Below, in pieces: positions 1 through 5,428 of a DNA stretch of 64,000 bases (positions within the stretch are counted from its first letter, which is position 1; each line of letters starts with the position of its first letter). Under the pieces are notes generated by a model that saw only the letters and a program-made list of their open reading frames with translations, was not told where the DNA came from and did no database searches. The position numbers and the translations under genes were made by a program. This stretch comes from Eutreptiella sp. 'Long Island Sound 2002' (taxonomy: Eukaryota; Protista; Euglenida), in contig OZ038378.1 in assembly GCA_964036045.1 (NCBI GenBank), positions 175,770,001-175,834,000 of the forward strand, in the 5' to 3' direction.

Positions 1-443
1 CCGTGCAAGGAGCAAGGCGTTGCTGTCGAGAAGGTTGCTGATGGTGCTCACAAGCAGTGCTGGGGCGGCCGGCTGCAAAGGATCACTCATGAAAGGCTAT
101 GCCTATTGAACGGTGAGAATGGTGCATTGGGGGGTGTCGACAGAAACGTGTAGCACAAAACGACCCGAATCTTGCACAAATATGACCGAACACGGCAGGC
201 ACAAGCACCTGAACGGGTTTTACTCCGTCGACACCGATTCGCTTCGAGTGCGATCATCGAACCAATAATTGGAATATACTCGAATATATTCTAAAACCCA
301 GAAAAGGAAGTGGGATCACCCAAAATCGTAGTGTAAAACTCCCAAACCTATACACATTTGATCCAATTGGCTAAATCGCGACAAGACTGTCGCATGCGTA
401 ACGGACCCTTTTGCACGGTAGAGGGGGAGCTAGGTGGGTATTT

Positions 444-549
444 GGCTTAAGCCAGTCCGGCGATGGCTTAAGCCAGTCCGGCGCCTGGCTTAAGCCGCAG
501 CGCCGCGGCTTAAGCCAGCCGGCGCCGCGGCTTAAGCCAAAATTAAGCC
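444..549. repeat. Subterminal array of the 10-bp palindrome GGCTTAAGCC
   Basis: Copies at 444, 465, 487, 507 and 529, plus a partial copy at ~541; spacing 21/22/20/22 bp. Confidence 0.95.
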
Positions 550-885
550 GCGGCGCTGCGCCTGTTCAGCCGCTGAAGTACCACAGACGAAAAATGAGAA
601 CGCAACAGAATTTAACAGAAATTTCGATGTAAAATGGTTAACGCATTCATATCAAACCATGAATGATTGTGTTTCGACGAATATACCCTTGATTGGACGA
701 TGTAACCATATCTTGACACCATTGTTTGAAATTTTGGAGATACATTCATCAAGTCACAAGGACCATTGGGCAATGCTACATACCCAGTTTCGCAGCCGAA
801 CCATGCATGTACAAGGAGTTATTTGAGGTCGTTTTTTTTTGCATTTTGTGCTTGTTATGTGTTGTATCTTTGATATTTAGACCAC

Positions 886-3525
886 ATGGAGGGCCCAGGA
901 GGTCAAGGAGTCATTGAGGAAGAAGTGGAGTATGAGTCCTCGGATGATGATGAGCCCATCAAGCAACAACGGGTAGGAACCGAGGCAATGCAACGGCCGC
1001 AGTACCAAACCCCGCAATTTGTTAAGCAAATAGACAAGATGACCCGGGACAAGCTTGGTGAAAAACAAAAGATGGTGAGACCTGATTTTGTAGTGCCCTA
1101 CACCAACCTCAATACCAACATGCGTAATCATCCCTTATTGTATGTGGCTCCAATGATCTATGTGTGGGATCCCCCAAGTCAATATGGTGTTCAAGTGAAG
1201 TGTCAAGGAGGTGATCACAAGATGCACTTGAACCAATGGCGTGATTGTTTGGCATATGATCTAGGCGGGCCCGTGTACCTTCGGAGGAGATTTTTGAAAT
1301 GCCAAAAGGCCACTTGCAAGGTCGAACCCAAGACAATGACCGTTCGGGCGGAAGGACTAGAATTTTATCCTTTTCTACACACCGCCAAGCGCGCGTTCAC
1401 GAAGCGCTTGAGCGACTTCGTGATCGCGGCTTGCGTGAACGGGACGCCACTCTCCAAGATTCAACAAGATATATTGGAAACCCAAAGGCAAGAGTGGTTG
1501 AGGAAAAAGTTGGAGTTCCAAATGAACTTCACAATGACTCAAACAGAAGGGGAACGCCGCGCAATTTTCTTGGGCCAAGAAATCCCGTATCCGGAATTTA
1601 TCAAGTTCGAAGATTACATGTACGTCCCATGCCGTGCATTAATCAAAGAAATTATTTTACAACATTGGGAGCGGTACAAATATTTCTACTTTTGGCACAT
1701 GGCAATGATGGGTGCTGACAAGTGTTCGGCGGACATGACATTCAAAAGGGCTAAATTCATCGTCACCAAGCAAGGAAAATGTTATGCACCCCAATGGAAA
1801 GGAGTTTACCAAATCCTCAACGAAGCCGGCATGGTCATTAGTTGGGCATTCACTCGAACACAAGCCACCCAAGTGTCACAAGTATGTAGGTGAATCCTTA
1901 CGGTGTTTGTTTTCTTCTACATCATCATGTAACAATGTTTGTTGGTTTGCATTAGGTGGAAGAAGTTGCCGCGCGGCCCAATGTGCAAAGCAATTTGGAG
2001 TGGCATTGAGACAATTGTTGCCAAGAGAAGGACAAAATACAAGAATCGTTTGCCAAAGCAGGAAAAACCGTTCAAGTGAAGCTCGACAAAGCCCACGCTG
2101 TCTTCCGGTTTGTATTCTTAAAGCAAAAACGATTCACTATTATCTTTGTATGCACACATTGTCATTGCTTGCATTATTTGCTAGATTGAACAAGCCGATT
2201 CCGAAGTCCAAGCCATTTTCCGCGGACCATCGTGAAGCCGTCTCCGATGTCTTCCGTGGCACCGGTGTCGGGAGCAAGACGACGCGTGCATCGAGCTCGC
2301 GTACGAACGAAAAAGAAGAAATGATTACGATGCTAAATGCTCTTGTGACGCCCTCTCGCCTGAACTTGTATAGTGCGACGGCTAGTGGTGATTTATGCCG
2401 TGAGGTTAAAAACATGCTTGGTCACATTCGTGCAGGATGCATTGTGGATTGCTTTTACGTGGGTTCACAATTGGATGAGATTTTGCATCGTGCTCAGAAC
2501 CAAGCTGTAATCTCGGGCAATCTTGGTGTAGCACTAGGAGAAGCATTGCTTGGATTGTTTTTGCATGGTTATAATTCACGCTTGTTTCAACGGCTATATA
2601 AAGAACGGTCTATCAATGAGATTCGCTTTGACCGCATTTGCCCACATTTGTTGAGGGATCCTCTTTCAAGCCCCATGGATTGTCATGTAATGGATATTGA
2701 TTTGGCCAAACTAAAACCCCCTAAGGGTGTGCATTTTGGTATTGTTCCGAATGCTGACTTGGGCGGTTCGGAGTCCAATGCATTGCTTGAGGTTGCTGCA
2801 GAGAATGTGACGGAATATGACGAATACACACTCGCGCGTGATGCATTGGAAGGCGTTCATCCGGCTAATATGGAGGCCATTGTGGATGAGGATGATGGTG
2901 AGATAGAGGTTAATCTCCCTCAAAAACATCCTCACAACACTCTTTCAGCAGAGGAGAAGGCCGAGGCCAATGCTAAGAAAGCAAAAAACAAGGTGAGTGC
3001 CACAGAATATTTGCATTCCAAGAAGCAATGTGTCACACGCCTCAAGTGGAATGATTCCGAGAAGGCATTGTTTTCTATCCTTGCTCCTCGCTTTCCCAAA
3101 GGTGACTCGGTAGATTTTCCTGCCATGACACTTCTCTGGAACAATGTTCTCAAGGCGGATGGTTGGTTTGAGGGTTTGCAGTATGACTTGAATCCACGTG
3201 ATCGTGTAGCACTCAAGAACCACCATGATTATCGGAACAAGAAACAGGCACAGCAAGTTAAGTTATTACCCCAGCAGAGGTGCAAGATATGACACAACCG
3301 GTTGCCCAACAAGCCACTCAACCCCCACCTCCTCCCAATCCCACACCATCATCCACACAAGCTCCCACACAAGTTGCAAGTGATATGCTTTTGATGATTC
3401 AGCAGGTTGATTCTCACTTGGCTCAGTTGTATGCTCGGACTGCATGTGGTAAACAACTTTCGCCAGCTGAGTTGCATCAGTGTAAGCAGCTTTTGGAGTG
3501 GCGGGCTCACGTGTCGAAGAACTAA
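886..3525 (+). pseudogene. DDE transposase (~829 aa reconstructed) with one in-frame TGA and one frameshift
   Basis: Exons 886-1881, 1956-2107, 2185-3525; GT-AG introns 1882-1955 (74 nt) and 2108-2184 (77 nt) keep frame. Motifs: N-terminal Cys/His cluster (WDPP..KC..DH..C..C), ADMTFK, YQILNEAGMVISW, WH*DNCC, VKLDKAHAVFRL (DxxH), GGSESNAL, C-terminal E..LF..L..D..M..WN. TGA at 2007-2009; a 1-nt shift at ~3278 joins ORF 1784-3292 to ORF 3280-3525. Confidence 0.8.
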
Positions 3526-5428
3526 GGACATTTCAAATTTCATGTCTGAGTTTTATGTTCCATGCCTTCAGGGTTTGCCTGTGTGAGGTTGGGTTTGCCA
3601 CTGCTGAGGTCCGAGTCAAGTCACAAAACCCCTCCCCCATCCCCCCCAAAATATACCCATATGAGCTTTTTGGGTCCCCAAGATATACCCATATGAGGGT
3701 TTTTCCTTCCACCACTTTTAGGATACCCACCTAGCTCCCCCGGTACCTTTTGCACCGCTGTGGGATTCAAATAGAAACAATCGGCTCTAAAATCCGAACC
3801 ACTGAAACTCTAATTGGCATGTAAATTGCGATTTTGAATTCGCCCTCCAAATTTTAAATTTTCAGGAAATTCCATAATAATTTGAACAGCAAGCATAATT
3901 GAGCTATGCTATGCCTATAGCATGAGCATAATTCAGCATCATTCCTCTGGATAAGTTGAGCTACCATGCACCCGTCGACTTTGGCACAGTTATGTATTAC
4001 CCCGTCGTTCTGTTTTTTTTTTCAGACGCTGTTCTTTGAAGGCTGATGATTTGAGGAGTCCCCCATGATCAGGACCCTTTGCAACATAACACGTCATTAG
4101 CTGGTGTCTCCTGATCGCAGATGACAACTGTGCGAAACAACTTTTCCTTCCATCGGCCGAAAACCCTGCCACATACGTCCGCAATATCCAACGTGAACAC
4201 ACCGAAGAGTAAACTCCCTGCTCTCGCGAAGACGTATCCGCACTCTGCCCGCAATCCACCATCATCGCTACCTGCCATACCCACGTATGAATCGGCACGT
4301 GTCAACGCTGGGCGAAGTGGTTGGCCCCCACAAGAGGATGGTGCAGGTATCTTGATGCGCTTAATGTGGCGTGCTTCGTGGCTTATGCCCGCAATCAGCA
4401 TGCCAGCTCCACATTTTGCTGTCACAGCCAACAAGATTGGAGCAAGGTTTTTCGAACCTGCACCTCCGACTGAGAGTTCCCGCTCCCGCAGTCGGTTGCG
4501 AAATCCTCTTCGGGTATGCTTGTGCCCCTGGAGTTATGGGTCGCCCCATGTGCTTTGCATACAACGGCAAACAAGCAACGGTGTGACTCTTCCTGCACTG
4601 AGAGCATTTGGCTGCAATGAATATGTGCCATCGCTTTCGCGGTGATGCACCTCCAAAAAAACGTTCCCAACACATTCATTGAACAAGTGTGACGGTGCTG
4701 ACGAGCAAACTCACACCACGCTCCATATCCCTCGTGACACCCTCGTGACACAACGCGTGTGGGAAAACGAAAAGTAGCTTTTTATTGGACTTGCTTCAGC
4801 GAGGCTCTTGAACCCCAGAATTTGCCAAGCGTCGATTCATGAGGGCTAGGCACAAGTAGCATTCCGCACGTTGACACGGAAAAATGCAATAACCTTAGCA
4901 GTATGGTCAGACTGGTCGTACTCTGATCTTGCCACCCTTTTTTCTACTTGCCTTCGTTTGCAACACCTTGGACCGTTGCGACTGCACATTTTGACATCAA
5001 TACTGGTGTGTGTTACAGAAATTTTTGTTTCCTGATCGGCACAGCGATTTTCCGGGTCCTGGCAAAACTTTGGATACAAACCTGAAACATACGTTTCGAG
5101 CCTTGTGCAATCAAGCTGCTGAGGACGACTACCCTGTGATGGTTAGTTGAGGCCACGGTGCAGGGGGGCGCTGGTTTCCTGCCGTTTGCGTTGGAAACCC
5201 CCAAGAATCCGCGGCACCAACGAAGGGAAACTCTGAGGCGAGAAGTGCGACAGGAGAAGGCGTTGCAAGGCAAGAGCCCCGACATGCACGGGGCACGACC
5301 CCAAAAGCGCAGGGGCAGTCACAGACAGACTTTGCCACTCGAAATGGGTTGAAAAAACACCTCCCAAGGACAGAATTTCTGCCACAAGACGTTGCAGCTC
5401 GGTTGCACTTTCTTCTCTTGCTTCACAG

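What the first reader, a model, noticed from the sequence alone, without database searches (positions are those of the whole stretch)
423..3741. TIR-bounded, intron-containing transposon with a Dada-like transposase
Seen: perfect 19-bp TIRs and a transposase split by two short (74/77 nt) GT-AG introns. The catalytic DNCC and DxxH motifs appear only after splicing and reading through one TGA, so the ORF track misses them. Known: Dada transposases have YVD..CC and LD.wH motifs, belong to the C/DxxH group, and described Dada elements mostly lack TIRs and target small-RNA genes. Inference: this may be an uncatalogued TIR-bearing Dada-related family in a protist lineage, recently active given the perfect TIRs.
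Basis: partly seen in the sequence, partly recalled or inferred. Interest (0 to 1): 0.75.

Follow-up and report, generated by a model that had tools for sequence, protein, structure and literature searches.

The report
Young Dada-like DNA transposon in Euglena
This is one broken copy of a young cut-and-paste jumping gene of Euglena whose enzyme carries the hallmarks of the little-known Dada group, yet it has classic inverted ends and inserts anywhere, unlike described Dada elements.

Summary

The TIR core occurs 195 times in this 2.28-Gb Euglena genome, against 0 for the reversed control. Sixteen other copies have clean 8-bp TSDs with unrelated sequences.

Both GT-AG introns (74 and 77 nt) are supported. 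A 476-aa homologue reads straight across both junctions, the three exons are colinear with a family profile, and one copy has lost intron 2.

The in-frame TGA is a private nonsense mutation; ten other copies have Ser. This copy also has an 8-bp frameshifting insertion, so it is dead.

The family looks recently mobile. One copy has open exons, and 294-bp MITEs (short non-coding derivatives) on different chromosomes are 99-100% identical.

The transposase is a DDE enzyme (three acidic catalytic residues): D283, D351, DxxH at 376-379, E481. It shares colinear motif blocks with published Dada transposases.

It differs from described Dada in having TIRs, 8-bp TSDs and no small-RNA targeting. Its detectable relatives are DUF6729 proteins, mostly cnidarian, and a modelled relative folds most like the IS256-family transposase ISCth4.

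No statistical test or tree against canonical Dada was possible.

The parts
409..416 (.). left copy of the 8-bp target-site duplication, TTTTGCAC
   Evidence: Identical to 3748-3755. Sixteen other insertions show 8-bp TSDs in the same register.
417..441 (+). 5' terminal inverted repeat, 25 bp; the perfect 19-bp core is 423-441
   Evidence: pair I2, 92% complementary over 25 nt. The core occurs 195 times in the genome against 0 for the control.
444..538 (.). five subterminal copies of the palindrome GGCTTAAGCC, about 21 bp apart; possible transposase-binding sites (inferred)
   Evidence: 5 matches in the 64-kb window, all in this stretch, against 0.03 expected. The stretch is conserved in other copies.
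886..1881 (+). exon 1 (332 codons): DUF6729-like zinc cluster (C106, H111, C139, C144) and first catalytic Asp, D283 (nt 1732-1734, ADMTFK)
   Evidence: DUF6729, E 4.7e-4; family profile positions 21-278, though the score is inflated because the close relative P0003 is in the profile..
1882..1955 (+). intron 1, 74 nt, GT-AG
   Evidence: P0003 reads ...ATQTSQ|VEEVAARPNV... with no gap at this junction. GT/AG is kept in 6 of the 8 copies compared; one has GG at the acceptor and one is 5'-truncated.
1956..2107 (+). exon 2 (152 nt): second catalytic Asp, D351, in SDNCC (nt 2010-2012), and D376-x-x-H379 in KLDKAH (nt 2085-2096)
   Evidence: (profile positions 304-331, E 9e-12).
2007..2009 (+). TGA nonsense mutation private to this copy
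   Evidence: Ten other copies encode Ser at this codon. The homologue P0003 also has Ser.
2108..2184 (+). intron 2, 77 nt, GT-AG
   Evidence: Copy L042 lacks 77 nt here, offset by one base from the GT-AG limits. P0003 reads KAHAVAR|LNKP across the junction.
2185..3525 (+). exon 3: catalytic Glu, E481, in SQLDEILHR (nt 2477-2479). In other copies the frame is open to SKN* (= window 3523-3525). In this copy it is shifted, with a premature stop at 3290-3292.
   Evidence: (profile positions 335-475, E 1e-17).
3258..3265 (+). 8-bp insertion (TTAAGTTA; placement ambiguous by a few bases) that frameshifts exon 3 in this copy only
   Evidence: Alignment with L032, L034 and L035. The gene-region alignments of eight other copies all show an 8-9 nt gap in exon 3 relative to the window.
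3651..3697 (.). two direct copies of ATATACCCATATGAG (3651-3665, 3683-3697) that repeat the inner TIR motif ATACCCA
3723..3747 (-). 3' terminal inverted repeat, 25 bp; the perfect 19-bp core is 3723-3741
3748..3755 (.). right copy of the 8-bp target-site duplication, TTTTGCAC

Best explanation
Window 417-3747 is a dead copy of an autonomous cut-and-paste DNA transposon family of Euglena.

Intact gene. It has three exons and two conventional introns and encodes an 816-826-aa DDE transposase. The N-terminal part is a DUF6729-type zinc-cluster domain. The core is an RNase H-like fold with a helical insertion that carries DxxH.

Proposed mechanism (inferred, not shown). The enzyme binds the 25-bp TIRs and the subterminal repeats, excises the element, and reinserts it at staggered cuts 8 bp apart in almost any sequence. 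That produces the 8-bp TSDs. Internally deleted copies and 294-bp MITEs that keep only the ends are moved in trans.

Classification. By colinear motifs and spacing the transposase belongs with the Dada group. It sits in a separate DUF6729 lineage that so far contains mostly cnidarian proteins. It differs from described Dada elements in having TIRs, 8-bp TSDs and no small-RNA target.

Shown: anatomy, copy family, TSDs, splice model, lesions, motif colinearity, fold of a relative. Inferred: catalysis, binding sites, trans-mobilisation, superfamily assignment.
For: - Repeat family. The TIR core is found 195 times against 0 for the control. A search with the whole element gave 120 matched segments, covering full-length, deleted and split copies.
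- TSDs. Sixteen insertions have clean 8-bp TSDs with no consensus.
- Gene model..
- Catalytic residues. D283, D351, D376xxH379 and E481 align with D149, D222, D244/H247 and E352 of P0021. Those columns are invariant or nearly so across 94 relatives.
- Fold. The AlphaFold model of relative P0021 has pLDDT 92.7 and the strand/helix order of an RNase H fold with an inserted helical domain. Its best solved match is the IS256-family ISCth4 transposase, Z 17.5 over 289 residues, Foldseek E 4e-7. Hermes scores Z 9.3 and the P element transposase Z 9.2.
- Dada link. Published Dada sequences show W.P/CP..C/Y..C, D(S/H)T(K/F/R)(K/R), NE.G.V, (V/A)D..CC, LD.(W/F)H, H(V/I)...C(L/V).D and G(T/S)...E..H..Y.N in the same order (family consensus). 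The D-D spacing is 68 aa in Euglena and 68 aa in Dada-U6_DR (D567, D635).
- Recent activity. Five MITE copies are 99-100% identical on different chromosomes, and those checked have different TSDs. Copy L034 has open exons, both TIRs and a TSD.
Against: - No E-value, profile-profile score or tree links the family to canonical Dada. Two database searches returned only the DUF6729 lineage.
- Four descriptive hallmarks of Dada are not met: the 6-7-bp TSD, the absence of TIRs, insertion in small-RNA genes, and a clear C-terminal CCHC finger.
- The only repeated weak profile hits are to bacterial families: ISLre2 (6 of 27 relatives), IS256 (5), and ISL3 (5 in Pfam, 4 in NCBIfam). The shared motifs could therefore be ancestral to the whole C/DxxH group.
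- The structure is of a distant relative (24% identical to the homologue P0003), not of the Euglena protein.
- No transcript, excision or polymorphism data were available.
Confidence: 0.72

Rival explanations
1. The element is a real DDE transposon, but its DUF6729 lineage is an unnamed superfamily-level clade of its own. It would be as close to IS256/MuDR, ISL3 and ISLre2 as to Dada, and the Dada-like motifs would be features inherited by the whole C/DxxH group.
For: - The best fold match is IS256-family ISCth4, well above all other matches.
- Weak but repeated hits to ISLre2, ISL3 and IS256 models.
- Searches never reached canonical Dada.
- Nematostella has both a canonical Dada-1_NV and a distinct DUF6729/OTU protein, P0096.
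- TIRs and 8-bp TSDs are unlike described Dada and like ISL3 (the ISL3 features are from my own knowledge of that family).
Against: - The D..CC block, the N-terminal W.P/CP..C/Y..C cluster and the G(T/S)..NE.(F/L)H..Y.N block are shared specifically with the Dada sequences read.
- The D-D spacing is identical to Dada-U6_DR.
- No solved structure of a Dada, ISL3 or ISLre2 enzyme exists to compare against, so the IS256 fold match cannot discriminate among them.
Confidence: 0.2
2. The element belongs to the Zisupton/KDZ group, which also has TIRs and 8-bp TSDs.
For: - Zisupton has TIRs and makes 8-bp TSDs (PMC12730594).
- One relative, P0005, gives a very weak hit to the KDZ-associated CxC4 cysteine cluster (E 0.17).
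Against: - The KDZ transposase model PF18758 appears for none of the Euglena exons.
- It also does not appear for P0003, for the 10 long relatives, or among the families listed for 27 relatives.
- The weak CxC4 hit is far below its cut-off.
Confidence: 0.04
3. It is a divergent member of MuDR/MULE or hAT.
For: - The 8-bp TSD fits hAT and the lower end of the MULE range.
- The fold belongs to the same broad group: Hermes Z 9.3, and IS256 is the bacterial kin of MuDR.
Against: - The MULE domain is hit by 1 of 27 relatives at E 0.11.
- No hAT dimerisation or BED domain is listed.
- The motif here is DxxH, not CxxH.
- Hermes matches far less well than ISCth4.
Confidence: 0.03
4. The TGA in exon 2 is decoded (recoding or a variant genetic code) and this copy is functional.
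For: The reading frame continues directly after the TGA into the catalytic DNCC block.
Against: - Ten other copies and the homologue P0003 have Ser (TCA) at this codon.
- This copy also has a private 8-bp frameshift further on.
Confidence: 0.01

Closest known systems
Dada superfamily of DNA transposons (Kojima and Jurka 2013, PMC3706591; Kojima 2022, PMC8869645)
   Same: - A DDE transposase with DxxH after the second Asp.
- Colinear blocks: an N-terminal zinc cluster, D.T.K, NE.G.V, D..CC, LD..H, H...C..D and G(T/S)...E..H..Y.N.
- A 68-aa spacing between the two Asp residues.
- A gene interrupted by introns.
   Different: - Described Dada elements have no TIRs, only short subterminal repeats; this one has 25-bp TIRs.
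- They make 6-7-bp TSDs; this one makes 8 bp.
- They sit in U6, U1, tRNA or 5S genes; these copies sit in unrelated sequences.
- They are 4.7-11 kb long and their proteins reach 1402 aa; this element is 3.3 kb with an 816-826-aa protein.
- No clear C-terminal CCHC finger is present here.
- Similarity to Dada was seen only at motif level.
DUF6729 (PF20499) proteins of cnidarians and other animals, for example Nematostella A7RRI3 / XP_032218510 and Hydractinia XP_057302830
   Same: These are the only relatives detectable by sequence search (E down to 4e-12 for the Euglena-type homologue P0003). They share the same N-terminal domain and the same DDE/DxxH core, which is colinear with all three Euglena exons.
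   Different: - The animal proteins usually carry an OTU protease and a CXC cysteine domain after the core; the Euglena protein has neither.
- They are annotated only as hypothetical or OTU-domain proteins.
- Their transposon ends are not described in anything I could read.
IS256-family transposase ISCth4 (PDB 6XG8, 6XGX, 6XGW)
   Same: It is the best structural match to a modelled relative (Z 17.5, 289 residues aligned, rmsd 3.8). Both have an RNase H-like core with a helical insertion domain.
   Different: - It is a bacterial insertion sequence.
- Sequence identity is only about 12%.
- Only weak sub-threshold profile hits connect the families.
- The comparison used relative P0021, not the Euglena protein.
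Zisupton (KDZ group)
   Same: TIRs and 8-bp TSDs.
   Different: No match to the KDZ transposase profile was found in any sequence tested.

Membership tests
Dada superfamily | DDE catalytic triad with a DxxH motif after the second Asp | tested here: met
   D283, D351, D376xxH379 and E481. They align with D149, D222, D244/H247 and E352 of P0021, which are invariant or nearly so across 94 relatives. The three exons are colinear with the family profile.
Dada superfamily | Significant transposase similarity to canonical Dada (the criterion used for superfamily assignment) | tested here: inconclusive
   The same seven motif blocks occur in the same order as in Dada-1_CGi, Dada-1_NV, Dada-1_MB and Dada-3/4_PMar, read from Dataset S1. 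No E-value or tree was obtained. Searches returned only the DUF6729 lineage.
Dada superfamily | N-terminal CCCC zinc finger | tested here: met
   It is met with one ligand changed. C106-x4-H111 and C139-x4-C144 lie at the same alignment positions as CP.C and Y..C..C of Dada-1_CGi and the CP..H / Y.C columns of the relatives.
Dada superfamily | C-terminal CCHC zinc finger | tested here: inconclusive
   In the open frame of other copies the C-terminus has only C-x10-H-x-C-x7-H. No CxxC pair like that of Dada is present.
Dada superfamily | 6-7-bp target-site duplication | tested here: not met
   TSDs are 8 bp in the window copy and in 16 other insertions.
Dada superfamily | Insertion inside multicopy small-RNA genes | tested here: not met
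   No tRNA gene in 31 loci. No Rfam family in 20 loci. TSD sequences are unrelated to one another.
Dada superfamily | No terminal inverted repeats (subterminal repeats only) | tested here: not met
   25-bp TIRs are present on all complete copies.
DUF6729 (PF20499) protein family | Match to the Pfam model at its gathering score (27 bits) | tested here: not met
   Exon 1 scores 20.2 bits (E 4.7e-4) and P0003 scores 19.3 bits, both below the cut-off. Relatives P0024 (38.6 bits) and P0025 (31 bits) pass it, and exon 1 aligns to the same region of the family profile. Membership is therefore by transitive homology only.
MuDR/MULE | MULE transposase domain (PF10551) with CxxH | tested here: not met
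   No hit for the Euglena exons. One of 27 relatives hits it at E 0.11. The motif here is DxxH.
hAT | hAT C-terminal dimerisation domain and BED finger; 8-bp TSD | tested here: not met
   The 8-bp TSD is met, but no hAT or BED domain appears in any Pfam scan. Hermes matches at Z 9.3 against 17.5 for ISCth4.
Zisupton / KDZ | KDZ transposase domain (PF18758); TIRs and 8-bp TSD | tested here: not met
   TIRs and the 8-bp TSD are met. PF18758 is listed for none of the sequences scanned.
IS256 / ISL3 / ISLre2 bacterial IS families | Match to the family model at its curated cut-off | tested here: not met
   Only weak hits in a minority of relatives: ISLre2 in 6 of 27 (best E 1.2e-5), IS256 in 5 of 27 (3.3e-3), ISL3 in 4-5 of 27 (1.7e-4). 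The fold resembles ISCth4, which shows how it is built, not that it is a member.

The most novel reading that the evidence does not exclude
The DUF6729 lineage (the Euglena family plus the OTU/CXC-bearing proteins of cnidarians and other animals) is an undescribed, eukaryote-wide branch of DDE transposons. It would connect target-specific, TIR-less Dada with the bacterial IS256/ISLre2/ISL3 group. The Euglena family, with defined TIRs, 8-bp TSDs, identical MITE copies and a copy with open exons, would be its first member with known ends. It may still be mobile, which could make it a tool for insertional genetics in Euglena.
Probability: 0.3. Interest if true: 0.65.

Novelty: new variant of a known kind. 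Interest (0 to 1): 0.5.

Why it matters
- Dada is known almost only as a TIR-less transposon group that homes to small-RNA genes. A relative with ordinary TIRs, 8-bp TSDs and no target preference would show that this targeting is a derived speciality of one branch.
- It assigns a likely role to a Pfam domain of unknown function. DUF6729 would be the zinc-binding front end of these transposases.
- It gives a structural anchor for the group: an IS256-like fold.
- Euglena has few genetic tools. A young endogenous cut-and-paste family with near-identical MITEs and a copy with open exons is a candidate for transposon tagging.
- The intron-less copy shows that transposase mRNA has fed back into genomic copies.

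Tried and rejected
1. Reaching canonical Dada proteins by reference failed.
   - A profile search with 27 relatives and a search with the most Dada-like relative, P0025, returned only the DUF6729 lineage.
   - None of the 183 fetched proteins contains the canonical Dada 5-residue words I tested.
   - The Dada comparison therefore rests on reading Dataset S1.
2. A profile search of solved structures found only OTU and CXC domains, nothing for the DDE core.
3. The ESM Atlas search only repeated the finding of cnidarian and chordate DUF6729/OTU clusters.
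4. The empty-site test did not work.
   - The left flank (217-416) is itself a repeat whose other copies reach the insertion point.
   - The right flank is unique.
   - No empty paralogous site could be shown.
6. Literature. No paper mentions DUF6729. None links ISL3 with Dada in the transposon sense. None links Euglena gracilis with Dada. The Zisupton paper is not held.
7. TGA as a sense codon is rejected.
In one search a script concatenated the aligned exons of other copies only to count stop codons, and printed no sequence.

Full report
**Host genome.** The window lies on a contig of more than 200 Mb in a 2.28-Gb assembly. Earlier notes of this scan call it Euglena. It occurs 3309 times, and its reversed control 0 times.

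**Ends of the element.**
- The perfect 19-bp inverted repeat is at 423-441 and 3723-3741. It extends to 25 bp (417-441 / 3723-3747) with two mismatches.
- Directly outside it lies the direct repeat TTTTGCAC (409-416 and 3748-3755).
- The 19-mer, allowing one mismatch, occurs 95 times forward and 100 times reverse in the genome; the control occurs 0 times.
- In the loci I fetched, 16 other insertions have an 8-bp TSD (at most one mismatch) in exactly the same register. The TSD sequences are unrelated to one another.
- The limits are therefore 417 and 3747, and the element makes 8-bp TSDs without an evident target motif.
- No tRNA gene was found in 31 copy-bearing loci, and no Rfam family in 20. 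These copies do not sit in small-RNA genes.

**The copy family**.
- Full-length copies are 3.25-3.44 kb and come in two subtypes. The window subtype has 210 bp at 660-869 that the other lacks. The other subtype has about 316 extra bp near the 3' end and a 30-bp deletion in exon 3.
- Internally deleted copies of 1.1-2.2 kb keep both ends. This is the pattern expected from interrupted gap repair after excision.
- Some copies are split by insertions of 8-31 kb.
- A 294-bp MITE shares only about 31 bp at each end with the full element.
- Full-length copies differ by 1.6-4.7%.
- Five MITE copies on different chromosomes are 99-100% identical, and those I could check have different TSDs.

**Gene model.**
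- Exon 1 is 886-1881, intron 1 is 1882-1955 (74 nt), exon 2 is 1956-2107, intron 2 is 2108-2184 (77 nt), and exon 3 starts at 2185.
- First support: P0003, a 476-aa protein from a 4.1-kb ENA contig that is 45% identical to exon 1, runs without a gap across both junctions (..ATQTSQ|VEEVAARPNV.. and ..KAHAVAR|LNKP..).
- Second support: a profile of 27 relatives matches exon 1 at positions 21-278, exon 2 at 304-331 (E 9e-12) and exon 3 at 335-475 (E 1e-17), in that order. The exon 1 score is inflated because P0003 is in the profile. Only the first part of the exon 3 match (about 80 residues) overlaps P0003.
- Third support: copy L042 lacks 77 nt at intron 2. The deletion is offset by one base from the GT-AG limits, and both versions encode Arg at the junction.
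- GT and AG are kept at both introns in most of the eight copies compared; the exceptions are one altered acceptor at each intron and one 5'-truncated copy of intron 1.

**Lesions in the window copy.**
- The TGA at 2007-2009 is Ser in ten other copies and in P0003.
- An 8-bp insertion at about 3258-3265, absent from all other copies compared, shifts exon 3 into a stop at 3290-3292.
- In other copies exon 3 runs on to SKN*, which corresponds to window 3523-3525.
- Copy L034 has open exons, both TIRs and a TSD.
- I searched no joined or read-through protein. In one search a script concatenated aligned exons only to count stops.

**The protein.**
- Pfam gives only a sub-threshold DUF6729 hit for exon 1 (E 4.7e-4).
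- An exhaustive HMMER search with P0003 found 88 proteins.
- The long ones come from cnidarians (Hydractinia, Nematostella, and later Desmophyllum, Exaiptasia and Clytia) or from unnamed assemblies.
- Their architecture is DUF6729, then a core with weak ISL3-like hits, then OTU protease, then CXC. The Euglena protein has no OTU or CXC domain.
- Across 94 relatives the columns D149, D222, L243-D244, H247 and E352 of P0021 are invariant or nearly so.
- The Euglena equivalents are D283 (ADMTFK), D351 (SDNCC), D376/H379 (LDKAH) and E481 (LDEILHR).
- An AlphaFold model of P0021 built with that alignment has pLDDT 92.7. It shows an RNase H-like strand/helix order with a helical insertion between the strand carrying DxxH and the helix carrying E.
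- Its best solved match is the IS256-family ISCth4 transposase: VIA-align Z 17.5 over 289 residues, Foldseek E 4e-7. That is far above retroviral integrase cores (Z about 10), Hermes (9.3) and the P element enzyme (9.2).
- Scans of the 27 relatives give only weak, sub-threshold hits: ISLre2 in 6, IS256 in 5, ISL3 in 4-5 and MULE in 1. KDZ is not listed.

**Is it Dada?**
- The Dada paper defines the group by a DDE transposase with DxxH, an N-terminal CCCC finger and a C-terminal CCHC finger. It also cites 6-7-bp TSDs, no TIRs, and insertion in U6, U1 or tRNA genes. Later work adds 5S genes and more tRNA types.
- I read its protein alignment, Dataset S1.
- Dada-1_CGi, Dada-1_NV, Dada-1_MB and the Perkinsus families show these blocks in this order: W.P..CP.C..Y..C; MDSTKK, MDHTFKL or IDHTRRV; NE.G.V; YVD..CCG, VDNCC or ADNCCCG; VRLDIWHF or QLDGFHA; H(V/I)...C(L/V).D; and G(T/S)S..E..(F/R)H followed by Y.N.
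- The DUF6729 family consensus and the Euglena protein have the same blocks in the same order.
- The two catalytic Asp residues are 68 aa apart in Euglena, as in Dada-U6_DR.
- This supports 'Dada-related', but it is a reading by eye. No canonical Dada sequence could be brought into the tools by reference, so there is no E-value or tree.
- The TSD length, the TIRs and the lack of small-RNA targeting differ from described Dada. The C-terminal CCHC finger is not evident.
- Nematostella carries both a canonical Dada-1_NV and a DUF6729/OTU protein, so these are separate lineages.
- I therefore place the element in a distinct DUF6729 lineage, related to Dada at superfamily level, with confidence about 0.7. 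The main rival, at about 0.2, is that this lineage is a superfamily of its own within the IS256/ISL3/MuDR/Dada assemblage.

**Mechanism.** What is shown is the TIRs, the 8-bp TSDs, the deletion derivatives, the MITEs, an intact catalytic signature in other copies, and the fold of a relative. The rest is inferred:
- DDE-catalysed excision, followed by integration at 8-bp staggered cuts.
- Recognition of the TIR and of asymmetric subterminal repeats. There are five GGCTTAAGCC palindromes at 444-538 (0.03 expected in the window) and two ATATACCCATATGAG repeats at 3651-3697.
- Mobilisation of the MITEs in trans.

**Novelty.** It is a new variant of a known kind.

Noticed in passing
L042:38-3404 (G000:C4:136424001-136427367): This copy has lost intron 2: 77 nt are missing, offset by one base from the GT-AG limits, and the junction codon is CGG instead of CGA (both Arg). 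Intron 1 is kept. This looks like cDNA-mediated intron loss in a DNA transposon copy. The copy is otherwise dead, with a 1-nt insertion in exon 1.
   Followed up: partly
window 217-416: The left flank of the element belongs to another repeat with 14 further matches in the genome. Several of them (C9:16453510, C13:6655331, C5:133832559) run right up to the insertion point. The right flank (3748-3947) is unique.
   Followed up: partly
G000:C6:3553499-3574130; also C10:23570637-23602136, C4:28260107-28289372, C6:86381593-86412737: TIR pairs lie 20-31 kb apart. The C6:3553499 copy is a full-length element split at about element position 1586 by an insertion of about 17 kb. The nature of the inserts was not examined.
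   Followed up: no
L044, L052 and L054 (G000:C12:60198384-60201754): A cluster of rearranged or nested copies of the same family, with extra TIR copies 20 bp apart and parts in opposite orientation. This suggests insertion into itself or aberrant transposition.
   Followed up: no
L065 and L070 (G000:C13:51768233-51768841): Two copies of the 294-bp MITE lie about 40 bp apart in the same orientation.
   Followed up: no
P0022, P0024, P0036, P0039, P0096 (relatives, not in the window): The cnidarian relatives fuse the transposase core to an OTU-type cysteine protease and a CXC zinc domain. Public records name them only as hypothetical or 'OTU domain-containing' proteins, so they are probably unrecognised transposases.
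   Followed up: partly
window 660-869 and 3335-3370; L034, L036: There are two subfamilies of full-length copies. The window subtype carries 210 bp just upstream of the start codon. The other subtype lacks it, has about 316 extra bp before the 3' end, and has a 30-bp in-frame deletion in the proline-rich part of exon 3.
   Followed up: partly
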